NCBI GenBank assembly: GCA_054661495.1 | Contig: BAAFSQ010000093.1 | Span: forward strand, 3,299-35,298 | Origin: Zygophlyctis sp. KS116 | Taxonomy: Eukaryota > Fungi > Chytridiomycota | DNA length: 32,000 bases | Reading direction: 5' to 3' | Shown: one piece after another, positions 5,966 to 15,013 of the stretch | Position numbering within the stretch: the stretch's first letter is position 1 | Layout: every line of letters begins with the position of its first letter | Notes under the pieces: model-generated | The model's database searches: none | What the model was told of the DNA's origin: nothing | What the model saw: only the letters and a program-made list of their open reading frames with translations | Translations under genes and position numbers: made by a program

Positions 5966-6596
5966 ATGTTTAAAGCAATTTCATCTATTCCATATGTCAT
6001 TGAATCTTCTCCAAGAGGAGAAAGAGTTTTTGATATATTTTCTAGACTACTTAAAGAGAGAATTATTTTACTAAATGGAGAAGTTCATGATTCTAGTTCT
6101 GCAATTATTGTTGCTCAATTACTATTTTTAGAAGCAGAAAATCCTAAAAAGCCAATTGCAATGTATATAAATTCTCCAGGTGGTTCAGTGACTGCTGGAA
6201 TGGCTATATATGATACGATGCAGTATATTCAGTCTCCAGTTTCGACTGTTTGTATCGGTCAAGCATGCTCAATGGGATCTTTACTATTAGCTGCAGGTGA
6301 GCCTGGATCTCGTAGTATTCTACCAAATGCAAGAGTAATGATTCATCAACCAAGGTAAATTTCTATAAAATAAAGACTATAGTGGTGGTGCATCTGGTCA
6401 AGCAACGGACATTGCTATTCATGCAAAAGAAATTTTAGATGTTCGATCTAAATTAAATTCAATTTATGTTCATCATACTAAACAGCCTCTGTCTGAAATT
6501 GAAAAAAGAATGGAAAGAGATCATTTTATGTCTGCACAGGCTGCAGTGGATTTTGGACTAGTTGATAAAATTTTAATAAAACGTTTGGAAGCTTGA
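5966..6596 (+). CDS. CLPP: ATP-dependent Clp protease proteolytic subunit (mitochondrial type)
   Basis: [47 protein letters not shown] (catalytic Ser), MIHQP|SGG (catalytic His), MERDHFMSA; intron 6355-6382. Confidence 0.96.
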
Positions 6597-6697
6597 TGTA
6601 TTAACACTAGAGGAAACTCTTAAACGTCTCAAGAATGGGGCGTAGGTGTAAAACAAGTTGCGGCCTAGGTTTTACATTTTGTTTTGAATTGTTTGAC

Positions 6698-7484
6698 ATG
6701 ACAAAAGTTGAATGGCCATTGGAAGCTCAGACAGTAATTTATATATTCTTAATTTTTAGGTCATTGTTACTGGTAACTTTGATAACTGGGCTGGGACTTT
6801 TCCTTTAATTAAAGTAATTTATTTTTCTAAACCTAGAATGAATCTGGAATATTTGTTGGTAATCTATCTAATCATGATTGGCCTTTAATTTTCAAGTTTA
6901 TTGTTGATGGAGAATGGAAAACTTGTTTAGAATATTCTATCCAATCTGATGATGATGGAAATGTTAACAATATTTTATATTTTGAAAAATCTCAAGATAT
7001 CAAGGAATCATTGCAAGGGCAAAAAAGTATTTCAAACCTGGATTTGAAGCAGACTTGGCCTTTACCAGGTATCCCAGAGGAAACTTCTCCAGAGATTAGA
7101 GGCATTCAAATTCCAAAAGTTTTAATCACAGATGTAAATGGTGTTGAATCAGACTATCCAATTAGTCTAAACATGCAAGGGAATAATCAAGTTCCCAGAG
7201 TGATTTTAACTGATGTCGATGGAAAGGTTTCTTTGCCTATTGTCCCAAATATAGTCATTACTGATGCTGATGGGAATATTACAGAAGAGATTATAGATTA
7301 TATTGATCTTCCAAGATCACCAATGGTTAATTCATTTTCAGATTCTAGTATGGATTCGGTAGACTCTCAAACCACGTTGAATGCCTCACAAGAAGATAAA
7401 AATTCGAAAGCTTCTAAAAAGTTGTTTAAACCTTTAAAGGGATTAAAGAAGAAAACTTCTCGTTTAATGCAATCTGTAATTTAA
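6698..7484 (+). CDS. AMPK-beta-type CBM48 (Mdg1/Crp1-like) protein with three PxIxIT-like repeats
   Basis: Spliced N-terminus MTKVEWPLEAQT|VIVTGNFDNWAG...FKFIVDGEWKT...DDDGNVNNIL is a typical AMPK1_CBM pattern; two short introns (about 6734-6759 and 6814-6837) join in frame to ORF 7011-7484. Confidence 0.85.
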
Positions 7485-13003: not shown

Positions 13004-13073
13004 CTTCATCTCATTTCAAAAAAAAACAATTTGGTACAATATAAAAATCTACAGAGTTAGTGATAAAGAGAAA

Positions 13074-13163
13074 CTGATCAGATAGTTTGGTAAGTTTGTA
13101 CAGTATCAGCACTTTAGATCAGAAGCAGAACTGGCATGTTTTGTACAGTTATCATCACTTCAG
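13074..13163 (-). ncRNA. Box C/D snoRNA, snR61/SNORD38-like (LSU Am1133 equivalent)
   Basis: Box C GTGATGA; D' CTGA preceded by GCCAGTTCTGCTT (13 nt antisense to 25S AAGCAGAACUGGC, +5 rule hits the A after AAGC); C' GTGCTGA; D CTGA; terminal stem CTGA/TCAG. Lies in intron 13049-13176 (GTATGT...CACTAAC...TAG). Confidence 0.9.
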
Positions 13164-13206
13164 AATAAAAACATACCTATTATAATTTAAAGAGAAACAA
13201 TATGTG

Positions 13207-13282
13207 AGAGCATCAGTTGGTGGTGCATGTTATTTATCATCATCATATGTATGTAATAATGGATATCATCATCATTTGCTCT
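13207..13282 (-). ncRNA. Box C/D snoRNA, snR55/SNORD33-like (SSU Um1269 equivalent)
   Basis: Terminal stem AGAGCA/TGCTCT, box C ATGATGA, D box CTGA preceded by CATGCACCACCA-A, antisense to 18S UGGUGGUGCAUG; the +5 rule hits the U equivalent to yeast U1269. Confidence 0.9.
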
Positions 13283-13362
13283 AAACTTTTTGTAAAAAAA
13301 AAGAATAAAAGTCCTTGTCCTGGTACTTGAGAATAACTTTAGTCCGCAGTTAAATTGAAATT

Positions 13363-14289
13363 CTAGACTTTAATCCCCAAATTTGACAAGTAATTAATAA
13401 ATTTAGCATGATTTCCATTTGATCTAGCAATATCAATACAAGATTCACCAGAGAAATTTTTTTGTTGAATTAAATCCATTATTCCTTTTTTTCCAATTGT
13501 TTTTAGACCATTGTCTACAATTATACAAAAACAAGTAAAAGAATTTGATGATATTGAAAGAGATAAACAATTTTCTCCAGTAAAACAACGTAATTCAAGG
13601 TCAGCTTTTGCTTCTACTAACCATTCTGTCCAAAGAGAATGTTTTCTTTCTATAGAAATCATTAGAGGAGTAAATCCATTAAATGAATCAGGTTCATTAA
13701 TATCCCAACCTTTAGATTGTAATTCTGTTAATATTTCCTGATCATTAAAACCATAAAACGCAGAAATCCAAATTGGACCTTCATTCCTACTATTTATAGT
13801 AATATTAGATAAAGCAGAATAATTAAGTCTCCATATTATCCTATTTTGAATAATCATTTCCTGAATGACTGAAACTTGATCTGGTTCAATTGAATATTTA
13901 ACTCCTATACAAGAAATCCCATAATTCAGATTAAACAAATGAGATAATTTGTTTCTAGTACAAGCAAAGACAATATTCATTTGCTTCTTGTGACATGAAG
14001 AAACAATTCTTGCAATTTCCTGATCATGATCTCTAATATTTTTAGCAATAATTACCATCTTGATTTTATCTAAATTCCTATAAACTTGATTTAGTCCAAT
14101 GATGAGATTTGTTTTTTTAGATTTAATAAGAAATTTAGATACAATATCTTCCAATTCTGAATTTATAAATTGATTTACATAATTCCCAATAAAACTTGAA
14201 TCAGTTGCACTTGTTTTCTGTAATATTCTAGAGATGCTAGAGTGAAACTGGTCAAATTCAATAAACTGCACTGCATTCTGCGAGAGCAT
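13363..14289 (-). CDS. SBP2 (SECISBP2)-like L7Ae domain fused to ankyrin repeats, intronless
   Basis: YVNQFINSELEDIVSKFL...IIGLNQV...KIKMVIIAKN...IVFACTRNKLSHLFNLNYGISCIGVKY resembles the SBP2 RNA-binding domain. The C-terminal half has ankyrin-like units (NEGPIWISAFYG, NGFTPLMISIERKH, GENCLSLSI, GESCIDIA). Confidence 0.75.
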   Translation of the reverse strand: MLSQNAVQFIEFDQFHSSISRILQKTSATDSSFIGNYVNQFINSELEDIVSKFLIKSKKTNLIIGLNQVYRNLDKIKMVIIAKNIRDHDQEIARIVSSCHKKQMNIVFACTRNKLSHLFNLNYGISCIGVKYSIEPDQVSVIQEMIIQNRIIWRLNYSALSNITINSRNEGPIWISAFYGFNDQEILTELQSKGWDINEPDSFNGFTPLMISIERKHSLWTEWLVEAKADLELRCFTGENCLSLSISSNSFTCFCIIVDNGLKTIGKKGIMDLIQQKNFSGESCIDIARSNGNHAKFINYLSNLGIKV

Positions 14290-14310
14290 ATTTTCTCTTC
14301 TTCTTGTGCA

Positions 14311-14410
14311 ATTTCTATGCTAATTCTACTAATTCTATGCTAATTCTATAATATTTATGAAGATGTATGAAGATGTATGAAGATTTATGAAGATTTATAA
14401 AGATTTATTA
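14311..14410. repeat. Two adjacent minisatellites filling the intergenic gap
   Basis: (AATTCTA[TG]CT)-like units at about 14311-14350, then 10-nt AT(T/G)TATGAAG units x5-6 at about 14352-14410. Confidence 0.85.
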
Positions 14411-15013
14411 AAATGTTAAATAGAGTACAGTCCAAAAATATACTATAATCCTTGAATATTTAATATTAGCAGAATTAGGAATTAGATTAGAAGGCCATAA
14501 TACATCAATTTCCACTTTAGAATCTTGTGATTGTGCACCAAGAGCAGTCCAGAGTGCTTGTCCGTACAAATCTAAATTCCTTGAAACTTGATTTAAAGGC
14601 CATAAACATCCATTAGTTGGACAGAAATCTACAATTGTTGCATTTACAACTAGTGAATGATTTTTAGAATTCCTAATTTGTAGAGTTTGAAAACATGAAT
14701 TCACTTTATTAGATCCACCATATGCTCTCTCTGATACTGCAACTGTAAATGATTTTGGCCAAATAGATTTTGAAAGTAAATCTAGATTTTGTCTCTTTAT
14801 AGAGTCTAAAGAAGAACCATTAATATTAGCCATAATTTCCATCTGATCTCTATCATAAACTCCATCATTTAGAATCTTGTTCCATCGAGGATCTCCACCA
14901 GGTTGTCCATTGCTACATCCAACACCAACATCTAGTAATTGATATCCAATCTCTGAAAAGTGAGGAATAATAGGAAATGGTCCATAATGTGTTGCAAGTC
15001 CTGATTTCCACAT
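14408..15013 (-). CDS. RlpA/DPBB (expansin-like) protein with GPI-like C-terminal tail
   Basis: G.ATHYG N-terminal strand, VAVS...YGG...CFQTLQI, VNATIVDFCPTNGC, LDLY..LWTAL; hydrophobic C-terminus after NSA. Confidence 0.75.
   Translation of the reverse strand: MWKSGLATHYGPFPIIPHFSEIGYQLLDVGVGCSNGQPGGDPRWNKILNDGVYDRDQMEIMANINGSSLDSIKRQNLDLLSKSIWPKSFTVAVSERAYGGSNKVNSCFQTLQIRNSKNHSLVVNATIVDFCPTNGCLWPLNQVSRNLDLYGQALWTALGAQSQDSKVEIDVLWPSNLIPNSANIKYSRIIVYFWTVLYLTF

What the first reader, a model, noticed from the sequence alone, without database searches (positions are those of the whole stretch)
13363..14289. SBP2-like L7Ae domain fused to ankyrin repeats in a fungus, next to K-turn RNAs
Seen: the N-half matches SBP2-specific features beyond generic L7Ae (YxxQxxxxELxxxVxxxL helix; FAxxRxxLxxxxN...SxxGxxxY). 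It lacks the RFQDR-containing segment and has GLNQV for GLREV. The C-half is ankyrin repeats. Known: SBP2 binds SECIS kink-turns for selenocysteine insertion, and Sec machinery is reported in only a few early-branching fungi. Inference: either this lineage retains Sec decoding, or an SBP2 relic was repurposed as a K-turn RNA adaptor. Its stop lies about 80 nt upstream of same-strand box C/D snoRNAs, whose C/D motifs are K-turns, which raises possible co-transcription or autoregulation.
Basis: partly seen in the sequence, partly recalled or inferred. Interest (0 to 1): 0.8.

Follow-up and report, generated by a model that had tools for sequence, protein, structure and literature searches.

The report
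Short SBP2 relic in Sec-less fungus
A fungus that shows no sign of selenocysteine machinery still keeps, under selection, a short copy of the selenocysteine-decoding RNA-binding protein SBP2 with an ankyrin tail; that tail is shared with SBP2 of selenocysteine-using fungi, so the protein probably has a second, selenium-independent job.

Summary
Window 13363-14289 (minus strand) is an intronless 308-aa gene with an L7Ae domain followed by about four ankyrin repeats. Its stop lies 80 nt upstream of two same-strand box C/D snoRNAs.

- **SBP2 type.** A profile of the family's N-domains hits human SBP2 at 42.9 bits and any other L7Ae protein at 27 bits or less. Foldseek also ranks SBP2 first.
- **Not a new fusion.** The nearest named relatives are the SBP2-like proteins of Gonapodya and Bifiguratus, which use selenocysteine, and of Quaeritorhiza. 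The complete ones carry the same ankyrin tail with the same unusual first repeat.
- **No Sec machinery found.** The window's 12.7-Mb assembly shows no tRNA-Sec, SepSecS, SelD, SECIS, eEFSec domain IV or second KTI12/PSTK-like gene.
- **SECIS contacts lost.** GLREV has become GLNQV, the E699 equivalent is Arg, the spacing is 18 instead of 20, and the RFQDR segment is deleted.
- **Still selected.** dN/dS among the short relatives is about 0.1-0.24.

Best reading: an SBP2 descendant with a changed or Sec-independent RNA or adaptor role. Selenoprotein-less insects give a precedent.

The snoRNA adjacency is conserved. A conserved CTGCGG element suggests, but does not prove, a separate snoRNA transcription unit.

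The parts
13363..14289 (-). Whole coding sequence of the 308-aa SBP2-like L7Ae + ankyrin protein, stop TAG at 13363-13365
   Evidence: ORF. Pfam L7Ae plus Ank. Orthologues start and end at the same places. dN/dS 0.10-0.24.
14122..14289 (-). N-terminal helical extension, aa 1-56. The second helix (about aa 31-56) is the SBP2-type helix that precedes the L7Ae core.
   Evidence: AF2 helices 4-24 and 44-56. SBP2 hits begin at profile positions about 20-40. Foldseek aligns 178 columns to SBP2 chain 7zjx_B.
13843..14121 (-). L7Ae core, aa 57-149. G65, A82-K83-N84, T111-R112 and S126/G129 are invariant. Q68 and R86 replace the two acidic SECIS-contact residues.
   Evidence: pLDDT is above 90 over the core.
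13780..13842 (-). Linker, aa 150-170, with the invariant RIIWR motif and the start of the NSRNE-P-W motif that opens the ankyrin domain
   Evidence: Invariant columns. The same W..F / NSRxExPxW motifs occur in Gonapodya and Bifiguratus.
13366..13779 (-). Ankyrin-repeat domain, aa 171-308, about four repeats
   Evidence: Pfam Ank_2, Ank_5 and Ank. PDB ankyrin hits. AF2 helix pairs with pLDDT 82-97.
13343..13349 (-). CTGCGGA heptamer, 60 nt upstream of snoRNA 1. Candidate upstream element of the snoRNA unit.
   Evidence: Invariant CTGCGG in the window, L008, L017 and L018. The same heptamer lies 62 nt before the first C box of another snoRNA cluster on C24.
13207..13282 (-). Box C/D snoRNA 1, SNORD33 / snR55-like
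   Evidence: Rfam RF00133, 51.6 bits. The D-box guide is conserved in L007. The same 5' end is present in L017 and L018.
13049..13176 (-). 128-nt intron: GTATGT at 13171-13176, CACTAAC at 13056-13062, AG at 13049-13050. It contains snoRNA 2.
   Evidence: Read directly from the sequence. The 5' splice sites of this genome begin GTA.
13075..13163 (-). Box C/D snoRNA 2, snR61 / Z1 / SNORD38-like
   Evidence: Rfam RF00476, 50 bits. The 19-nt D' guide is identical in L007.

Best explanation
The gene encodes a minimal descendant of fungal SBP2, the SECIS-binding protein. It keeps the SBP2-type L7Ae RNA-binding module and the C-terminal ankyrin domain typical of fungal SBP2. It lacks the long N-terminal half.

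It sits in a genome where no selenocysteine machinery can be found, yet it is under purifying selection. The residues that SBP2 needs to recognise a SECIS kink-turn are replaced or deleted: two acidic residues 20 positions apart, and the RFQDR / basic segment. The rest of the RNA-binding face stays invariant (G65, AKN 82-84, TR 111-112, the S..G loop).

The most likely working model is that the L7Ae face still binds a structured RNA, kink-turn-like but not a canonical SECIS. The ankyrin repeats would then dock a protein partner, so the protein acts as a Sec-independent RNA-protein adaptor.

Shown: homology, architecture, selection, changed contact residues, and no detectable Sec factors. Inferred: RNA binding, the target, and the adaptor role.

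The adjacent snR55/snR61-type snoRNA cluster is a conserved neighbour. Its functional coupling to the gene is not established.
For: **SBP2 subfamily.**
- The family N-domain profile hits human SBP2 (7zjw_B) at E 4.3e-10, 42.9 bits, against 27.1 bits for the next hit, archaeal L7Ae.
- The proteins recruited by that profile hit SBP2 at 209 bits, against 58 bits for L7Ae or Snu13.
- Foldseek ranks 7zjx_B first.

**Fungal SBP2 link.**
- The next-best hits after the short family are Gonapodya sp. KAJ3338991.1 (named SECISBP2-like), G. prolifera KXS16090.1, Bifiguratus OZJ04102.1 and Quaeritorhiza KAJ3057839.1.
- All the complete ones have ankyrin repeats after the L7Ae domain.
- They share a specific linker and first repeat, NSRxExPxW...GW...D.
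- The quick tree puts them in one clade with SH-aLRT 94.
- Gonapodya prolifera and Bifiguratus are Sec-using fungi (10.1101/314781).

**No Sec machinery in G000.**
- tRNA-Sec: best hit 36 bits against a cut-off of 47, and it is a tRNA-Gly.
- SepSecS, SelD and SECIS: no match.
- eEFSec domain IV: no match.
- KTI12 family: a single strong hit.
- There is only one SBP2-like gene.
- The five standard L7Ae paralogues are all present, so the assembly is not grossly incomplete.

**Changed contacts.** Q68 and R86 replace E679 and E699, the spacing is 18 instead of 20, and the RFQDR segment is deleted. These are required features according to PMC1874613 and PMC2500217.

**Selection.** dN/dS is 0.10-0.24, and 42 alignment columns are invariant.

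**Precedent.** SBP2 is retained in selenoprotein-less insects (PMC2500217).
Against: - No experiment or RNA data supports RNA binding or any target.
- The pocket residue is changed from acidic to basic, which could mean that kink-turn binding is lost altogether.
- The assembly has 1175 contigs and unknown completeness, so absence of Sec factors is strong but not absolute.
- Fungal SECIS elements are known to escape the standard models.
- A more careful tree on fewer rows leaves the join between the short family and the long fungal SBP2s unresolved. That link therefore rests mainly on the shared ankyrin tail.
- I could not check whether Gonapodya or Bifiguratus have a second, ankyrin-less SBP2. 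If they do, the ankyrin proteins would be paralogues and not the working SBP2.
- C. elegans SBP2 is only 153 aa and functional (PMC4114682). Short length alone says nothing.
Confidence: 0.6

Rival explanations
1. It is still a working SBP2. The organism decodes UGA as selenocysteine with a divergent or unassembled machinery, and the short L7Ae + ankyrin protein is its SECIS-binding factor, as in nematodes that have an RBD-only SBP2.
For: - It belongs to the SBP2 subfamily.
- C. elegans SBP2 is 153 aa, lacks the SID and is functional.
- Fungal SBP2 and SECIS elements are very divergent and often missed.
- The assembly is fragmented into 1175 contigs.
Against: - Six independent markers are absent: tRNA-Sec, SepSecS, SelD, SECIS, eEFSec domain IV and a second KTI12-like gene.
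- All five standard L7Ae paralogues and Kti12 were found by the same method.
- Both acidic SECIS-contact residues and their spacing are lost, and the RFQDR segment is deleted. The Sec-using fungi keep all of these.
Confidence: 0.05
2. The protein has been redirected to box C/D kink-turns and is functionally coupled to the snoRNA cluster behind it. The snoRNAs would lie in 3'-UTR introns of its own mRNA, giving co-expression or feedback through kink-turn binding.
For: - The stop codon is 60-115 nt before a SNORD33/snR55-like snoRNA on the same strand in the window, L017, L018 and L007.
- The guides are conserved down to the 32%-identity orthologue, where the upstream neighbour has already changed.
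- L007 has a consensus GTAAGA 55 nt after the stop and before the snoRNA.
- The window has GTACCA 37 nt after the stop, and 5' splice sites here begin GTA.
Against: - A conserved CTGCGG element keeps a fairly constant distance (55-85 nt) to the snoRNA and not to the stop codon. In L018 it lies inside the coding sequence.
- The same element and layout precede an unrelated snoRNA cluster on C24 that has no ORF in front of it.
- The cluster could equally lie in the 5' leader of the downstream Amidohydro_2 gene, which is also syntenic.
- Human C-SBP2 does not bind Snu13-type kink-turns (PMC1874613).
- The genome has its own Snu13.
- The SBP2 locus of Gonapodya has no snoRNA nearby.
- No conserved RNA fold lies between the ORF and the snoRNA.
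Confidence: 0.15
3. The L7Ae domain no longer binds RNA. The protein survives as a purely protein-binding scaffold, in which the ankyrin domain and the L7Ae fold both act as interaction surfaces.
For: - The acidic pocket residue (E699 equivalent) is Arg, Lys or Gln throughout the close family.
- The first acidic contact is Gln in the window protein.
- The basic RFQDR...KAK segment is deleted.
- The most strongly conserved block, RIIWR plus NSRNE-P-W, lies outside the classical RNA face.
Against: The invariant residues inside the L7Ae core (G65, A82-K83-N84, T111-R112, S126, G129) are the loops that contact RNA in L7Ae, 15.5K and SBP2. That pattern is hard to explain without an RNA ligand.
Confidence: 0.2

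Closest known systems
SBP2 / SECISBP2 (SECIS-binding protein 2; human structures 7ZJW and 7ZJX)
   Same: Same L7Ae subfamily. The profile match is best by 16 bits and the fold match is best. It shares the helix that precedes the core, the invariant Gly (G676) and Arg (R730/731), the IIA-x-N strand and the FA-x-TR-x-x-L helix.
   Different: No N-terminal half and no SID. The RFQDR / basic segment is deleted. E679 is Gln, E699 is Arg, and the spacing is 18 instead of 20. It has a C-terminal ankyrin domain. It occurs in a genome without detectable Sec machinery.
Fungal SBP2-like proteins of Sec-using fungi (Gonapodya prolifera KXS16090.1, Gonapodya sp. KAJ3338991.1, Bifiguratus adelaidae OZJ04102.1)
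   Same: Same two-domain unit: an SBP2-type L7Ae domain directly followed by ankyrin repeats. They share the W..F linker and the unusual NSRxExPxW first repeat.
   Different: Those proteins are 937-1458 aa with long N-terminal regions. They keep GLREV, the acidic residue at the E699 position and the FQxR...KAK..RR segment. Their hosts have Sec machinery.
SBP2 retained in selenoprotein-less insects (Drosophila willistoni, Apis, Nasonia; Chapple and Guigo 2008, PMC2500217)
   Same: SBP2 RNA-binding region is kept after loss of tRNA-Sec, EFsec and SecS. The SECIS-binding stretch between the two acidic residues is altered. The authors' inference was a secondary, Sec-independent role.
   Different: This is a different kingdom. 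Here the N-terminal half is gone completely, both acidic residues are replaced, and an ankyrin domain is present.
Snu13 / 15.5K and archaeal L7Ae (box C/D kink-turn binders)
   Same: Same fold and the same general RNA-binding loops.
   Different: Profile scores are much lower (16-27 bits against 43). The genome has a separate genuine Snu13 on contig C821. There is no Glu at the pocket position.

Membership tests
L7Ae/eL8/eL30/eS12 superfamily (PF01248) | Pfam model match above the gathering score | tested here: met
   25.8 bits against a cut-off of 22.1, aa 56-131. All 8 family members match.
L7Ae/eL8/eL30/eS12 superfamily (PF01248) | Alpha-beta-alpha sandwich fold | tested here: met
   AF2 model with pLDDT 87 and pTM 0.79. 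Foldseek gives TM by target 0.8-0.86 to L7Ae crystal structures at rmsd about 2 A.
SBP2 / SECISBP2 subfamily | Closer to SBP2 than to Snu13, Nhp2, eL8, eL30, eS12 or Rpp38 | tested here: met
   SBP2 scores 42.9 bits, L7Ae 27.1, Snu13 21, eS12 18, Rpp38 15 and NHP2 14. The set of relatives hits SBP2 at 209 bits. The genome's own paralogues fall outside the SBP2 group in the tree.
SBP2 / SECISBP2 subfamily | Helical extension N-terminal to the L7Ae core | tested here: met
   Aligned with SBP2 of animals, algae and fungi. Foldseek aligns 178 columns to SBP2.
SBP2 / SECISBP2 subfamily | Two acidic residues (human E679 and E699) with fixed spacing, needed for SECIS recognition | tested here: not met
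   The window protein has Q68 and R86, 18 positions apart. Gonapodya sp. and Bifiguratus have Glu and Glu, 20 apart. The requirement is stated in PMC2500217 and PMC1874613.
SBP2 / SECISBP2 subfamily | RFQDR / basic KAK..RR segment before the GLREV strand | tested here: not met
   13-column gap in the window's close family. The segment is present in the long fungal and animal SBP2s.
SBP2 / SECISBP2 subfamily | Invariant Gly (G676) and Arg (R730/731) of the RNA face | tested here: met
   G65 and R112 are invariant.
SBP2 / SECISBP2 subfamily | Co-occurrence with tRNA-Sec, SecS, PSTK, SPS and eEFSec | tested here: not met
   None was found in G000. Caveat: the assembly is fragmented.
SBP2 / SECISBP2 subfamily | Binds SECIS RNA and supports UGA recoding | not testable with these tools
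   Needs EMSA or CLIP and a recoding assay.
Fungal SBP2 with ankyrin tail | Ankyrin domain directly after the L7Ae domain, with W..F linker and NSRxExPxW first repeat | tested here: met
   The C-domain HMM hits Gonapodya and Bifiguratus at E about 1e-18 to 1e-19, directly after the L7Ae domain. BLASTP gives 2e-10 and 9e-10 over the linker and first repeat.
Fungal SBP2 with ankyrin tail | Monophyly of the L7Ae domains | tested here: inconclusive
   The quick tree of 163 rows gives a 16-row clade with SH-aLRT 94. The careful tree of 48 rows leaves this node unresolved.
Snu13 / 15.5K | Orthology with the box C/D and U4 kink-turn binder | tested here: not met
   A separate Snu13 gene lies on C821. 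The profile score to Snu13 is far below that to SBP2.

The most novel reading that the evidence does not exclude
Fungal SBP2 has always been a two-function protein. The L7Ae + ankyrin module would carry an ancestral, selenium-independent RNP function, and only the N-terminal half would serve Sec insertion. On this reading, the lineage lost Sec and shed the N-terminal half. It then retuned the RNA pocket and kept the second function, possibly on a kink-turn-like RNA of the ribosome or of snoRNPs. Its gene remains tied to the snR55/snR61 snoRNA cluster.
Probability: 0.25. Interest if true: 0.75.

Novelty: new variant of a known kind. Interest (0 to 1): 0.55.

Why it matters
Two points bear on open questions in selenoprotein biology.

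First, the SBP2-like proteins of the few fungi known to use selenocysteine carry a C-terminal ankyrin domain. I found no mention of this in the searchable literature. The authors who found these fungi called their SBP2 and SECIS elements unusually divergent, and an extra protein-docking domain may be part of the reason.

Second, a Sec-less fungus keeps a trimmed, retuned SBP2 under selection. This is an independent case, from another kingdom, for the suspicion raised from selenoprotein-less insects that SBP2 has a role outside Sec decoding. A protein this small (308 aa, no introns) is a convenient reagent for finding that role by RNA-binding and pull-down experiments.

Tried and rejected
- **Whole-protein PDB search** and the **ESM Atlas look-up** returned only generic ankyrin proteins.
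- **Word-index search** with the Gonapodya L7Ae + ANK region found only the query itself.
- **snoRNAs in other loci.** Rfam found none downstream of the gene in L019, where the ORF is truncated and the downstream DNA is unrelated. It found none around the Gonapodya gene either.
- **3' spacer fold.** RNAalifold on the spacer of four orthologous loci gave no consensus structure.
- **General promoter module.** CTGCGG plus an AGGGTT telo-box as a genome-wide module was rejected: 3 matches against 6 in the reversed control.
- **CTGCGG before a C box.** CTGCGG followed 40-70 nt later by a C box gave 11 distinct places (12 rows, the window's counted twice) against 1 in the control. Only the window and C24 are credible snoRNAs.
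- **Third snoRNA.** It is not alignable with the third snoRNA intron of L007.
- **Upstream neighbour.** The 201-aa protein has no Pfam family and is not conserved in L007.
- I re-ran it with sequences read from the session's files.
- **Outgroups.** For the genome's own Snu13, Nhp2 and eL30 I used only the longest stop-free exon piece. Exons were not joined.
- **Paper supplement.** The supplement of the fungal Sec paper, which would name the SBP2 genes used, is not held.
Full report
**1. The observation**

Window 13363-14289 on the minus strand is one uninterrupted ORF of 308 aa, ATG to TAG.
- Pfam finds Ribosomal_L7Ae at aa 56-131 (25.8 bits, cut-off 22.1).
- Pfam finds ankyrin repeats at about aa 178-262 (Ank_2, 32 bits, cut-off 27.3).
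- Rfam finds two box C/D snoRNAs downstream on the same strand. SNORD33 lies at 13207-13282 (51.6 bits) and snR61 at 13075-13163 (50 bits), both above their gathering scores.
- The stop at 13363-13365 is therefore 80 nt before the first snoRNA.

**2. The gene is real and selected**
- The word-index search found seven relatives of 280-320 aa, at 32-62% identity, all from environmental assemblies. They have the same start, the same end and the same two domains.
- Forty-two alignment columns are invariant. They cluster in a few motifs: G65, IAKN 81-84, F108, TR 111-112, LS 115-116, S126, G129, Q-x-RIIWR 148-154, N-x-x-NE-x-P-x-WI 166-175, EPD 199-201 and G-x-TPLM 205-210.
- Pairwise dN/dS among the five members for which I have DNA and for which dS could be estimated is 0.10-0.24. 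dS is above 1, so the values are rough.

**3. Which L7Ae subfamily**
- A profile of the eight N-domains, searched against all PDB sequences, puts human SBP2 first (7zjw_B, E 4.3e-10, 42.9 bits, residues 658-770).
- The next hits are archaeal L7Ae 27.1, Snu13 21.2, eS12 18.2, 15.5K 16.3, Rpp38 14.8 and NHP2 13.6 bits.
- The exhaustive profile search of 1.84 billion representatives gave 579 hits. The best are long proteins with the domain near the C-terminus, as in SBP2.
- Those with names are called SBP2, or come from lineages such as Limulus, Seison, Trichinella, Chlorokybus and Flabellula.
- An alignment of 77 of these domains hits human SBP2 at 209 bits, against 58 bits for the next family.
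- An AlphaFold model of aa 1-165 built on that alignment has pLDDT 87 and pTM 0.79.
- Foldseek ranks the SBP2 chain of the Sec-decoding ribosome (7zjx_B) first, with the longest alignment. L7Ae structures follow.
- The genome has its own eS12, eL8, Snu13, Nhp2 and eL30 genes. It has only one SBP2-like gene.

The SBP2 assignment stands.

**4. The ankyrin tail is not new to this lineage**
- After the short family, the next-best hits of the deep search are four fungal proteins:
  - P0011: Gonapodya sp. JEL0774 KAJ3338991.1, named 'Selenocysteine insertion sequence-binding protein 2-like', 937 aa.
  - P0014: Gonapodya prolifera KXS16090.1, 1445 aa.
  - P0055: Bifiguratus adelaidae OZJ04102.1, 1458 aa.
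  - P0018: Quaeritorhiza KAJ3057839.1, partial.
- The three complete ones have ankyrin repeats after the L7Ae domain.
- An HMM of the short family's C-domain matches them directly after the L7Ae domain at E about 1e-18 to 1e-19. Of the 159 SBP2-like proteins collected at that point, 13 matched it at E below 0.001. These were nine short-family members besides the window protein, and these three long proteins.
- Two more short metagenomic proteins (P0078, P0104) also have ankyrin repeats by Pfam.
- The similarity is specific and is not generic ankyrin similarity. The linker W-x-x-x-F and an atypical first repeat, NSR-x-E-x-P-x-W ... GW ... D, are shared (BLASTP 2e-10 and 9e-10).
- A quick ML tree of 163 domains places all of these in one 16-row clade with SH-aLRT 94.
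- A careful tree on 48 rows supports the short family (97/85) but leaves its join to the long fungal proteins unresolved. The link therefore rests chiefly on the shared tail.
- Gonapodya prolifera and Bifiguratus adelaidae are two of the five fungi in which Mariotti and colleagues found eukaryotic Sec machinery. They reported that fungal SBP2 is monophyletic and highly divergent (10.1101/314781).
- That text never mentions ankyrin. No paper in the library combines SECIS-binding protein, L7Ae and ankyrin repeat.
- Caveat: I could not search those genomes for a second, ankyrin-less SBP2.
- The Bifiguratus model also carries an N-terminal EFR3 domain, which probably reflects a merged gene model.

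**5. No selenocysteine machinery in this genome**

I searched the window's assembly in six frames (G000; 12.7 Mb in 1175 contigs).

| Factor | Result |
|---|---|
| tRNA-Sec (RF01852) | Best 36.3 bits against a cut-off of 47. ARAGORN calls it tRNA-Gly, and the other hits ordinary tRNAs |
| SepSecS (PF05889) | None |
| SelD (TIGR00476) | None |
| SECIS (RF00031) | None |
| eEFSec domain IV (PF21131) | None. The control genomes cannot validate this search |
| KTI12 / PSTK family (PF08433) | One strong full-length hit (176 bits), taken as Kti12, and no second copy |

The same method found every expected L7Ae paralogue. Absence is therefore well supported. It is not absolute, because the assembly is fragmented.

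**6. The SECIS-contact residues are changed**

I used the HMMER alignment to human SBP2 and the 15-sequence alignment.
- G676 corresponds to G65, which is invariant.
- R730/731 corresponds to R112, which is invariant.
- E679 corresponds to Q68. The motif GLREV reads GLNQV here. Other short-family members have GPNQV, GLNQA, G-x-KEV, GLDQV or GQREI.
- E699 corresponds to R86. The close family has Arg, Lys or Gln at this position.
- The two positions are 18 residues apart instead of 20.
- The FQ-x-R...KAK..RR segment is a 13-column gap.
- Gonapodya sp. and Bifiguratus keep G(L/M)REV, Glu at the second position, the 20-residue spacing and the basic segment. G. prolifera has GLRET and a spacing of 21. 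The partial Quaeritorhiza sequence also keeps GLREV, Glu at the second position and the basic segment.
- Clery et al. state that E699 and R730 are crucial for SECIS binding (PMC1874613). They equate them with E61 and K86 of 15.5K, which hold the flipped-out loop base.
- Chapple and Guigo cite the fixed distance between the two acidic residues as a defining feature of SECIS binding (PMC2500217).

The protein therefore fails the functional signature of a SECIS binder, while it keeps most of the L7Ae RNA face.

**7. What it most likely is**

It is a trimmed descendant of fungal SBP2 that has outlived Sec decoding.
- The conserved core loops argue that an RNA ligand remains.
- The acidic-to-basic pocket change and the loss of the basic segment argue that the ligand is no longer a SECIS.
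- The ankyrin domain is conserved from Sec-using fungi onward. It is the obvious protein-docking part.
- I therefore favour a Sec-independent RNA-protein adaptor. The identity is shown. The mechanism is inferred.
- Short length is not an argument in itself, since C. elegans SBP2 is 153 aa and functional (PMC4114682).
- There is a precedent in insects. D. willistoni, Apis and Nasonia lack selenoproteins but keep the SBP2 RNA-binding region. That paper concluded SBP2 may have secondary roles.

**8. The snoRNA neighbours**

*Conservation*
- The adjacency is conserved.
- In L007, the locus of the 32%-identity orthologue P0008, a SNORD33-like RNA starts 115 nt after the stop. A snR61/Z223-clan RNA follows.
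- L007 has the same D-box guide and an identical 19-nt D' guide.
- An Amidohydro_2 gene then follows, as in the window.
- The upstream neighbour is not conserved in L007.
- In L017 and L018 the same snoRNA 5' end (AGCAAATGA) appears about 50-80 nt after the stop, just before those contigs end.

*Intron layout*
- snoRNA 2 is clearly intronic: GTATGT at 13171-13176, CACTAAC at 13056-13062 and AG at 13049-13050.
- Introns elsewhere in this genome are 23-27 nt and begin GTA.
- snoRNA 1 has no canonical 5' splice site before it. The only candidate is GTACCA at 13321-13326.

*Evidence for a separate unit*
- CTGCGGA (13343-13349) is invariant as CTGCGG in the window, L008, L017 and L018. It sits 55-85 nt before the snoRNA, and in L018 it lies inside the coding sequence.
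- The same heptamer lies 62 nt before the first C box of an unrelated snoRNA cluster on contig C24.
- That cluster has no ORF in front. It has the same layout: first snoRNA, about 30 nt, a GTA 5' splice site, then an intron with a second snoRNA.
- The motif is not enriched genome-wide with a telo-box.
- Most other CTGCGG-to-C-box matches are coding sequence.

*Weighing it*
- I rate a separate snoRNA unit, possibly continuing into the Amidohydro_2 mRNA, and co-transcription with the SBP2-like gene as roughly equally likely.
- Nothing supports autoregulation. No conserved fold exists in the spacer.
- Human C-SBP2 does not bind Snu13-type kink-turns (PMC1874613).
- The Gonapodya SBP2 locus has no snoRNA.
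- From my own knowledge, as a lead only: snR55 and snR61 are also clustered in budding yeast. If so, the pair is an old fungal unit irrespective of this gene.

**9. Verdict**
- The SBP2 assignment and the 'relic' alternative are supported.
- Retention of Sec decoding is not supported.
- The snoRNA coupling is unproven.
- What is new is the ankyrin tail as a shared trait of fungal SBP2, and a retuned minimal SBP2 in a Sec-less fungus. I class it as a new variant of a known kind, of moderate interest.

Noticed in passing
G000 contig C172: cox1 at 6004-7341 (minus); tRNA at L014 1501-1582 (minus): ARAGORN's 'tRNA-Pyl (cta)' is a type-II tRNA (long variable arm, A73) with anticodon CUA. It sits in a low-GC tRNA cluster next to cox1, whose match contains two in-frame TAG codons. 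This looks like the mitochondrial genome, with UAG read as a sense codon by a Leu-type tRNA. From my own knowledge, chytrid mitochondria do this, so it hints at the organism's affinity.
   Followed up: yes
L004 (Nhp2) and L003 (Snu13) of G000: Spliceosomal introns in this genome are extremely short: 27 and 23 nt in Nhp2 and 26 nt in Snu13. Their 5' sites read GTAAGT, GTAATG and GTAACT. The snoRNA-bearing intron in the window is 128 nt.
   Followed up: partly
window 13343-13349 (minus); G000:C24:14835-14903 (L025): A CTGCGGA heptamer lies about 60 nt upstream of the first snoRNA of two unrelated snoRNA clusters. It is invariant in three orthologous loci from other organisms. It may be a snoRNA-unit promoter or processing element.
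   Followed up: partly
window 14290-14407: The 118-bp spacer between the upstream same-strand gene and the ATG consists largely of short tandem repeats. On the plus strand there are about three copies of an 11-mer (CTAATTCTATG-like) and four to five copies of a 10-mer (ATGAAGATGT-like).
   Followed up: no
window 14408-15013 (minus): The upstream neighbour is a 201-aa protein with no Pfam family. A 202-203-aa ORF sits directly in front of the SBP2-like gene in L008, L017, L018, L019 and the P0004 contig. It does not do so in the more distant L007.
   Followed up: partly
P0055 (Bifiguratus adelaidae OZJ04102.1): The deposited gene model joins an N-terminal EFR3 domain (aa 11-355) to the SBP2-like L7Ae + ankyrin part. 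This is probably two genes merged.
   Followed up: no
L019 1640-2552 (locus of P0006): In this contig the orthologue ends early, at 280 aa. The downstream DNA has no snoRNA and no similarity to the other loci. It is either a rearrangement or an assembly chimera.
   Followed up: partly
The only hit is an H/ACA model at E 0.86. The region is not alignable with the third snoRNA intron of L007. A second GTACCA hexamer lies at 13031-13036.
   Followed up: partly
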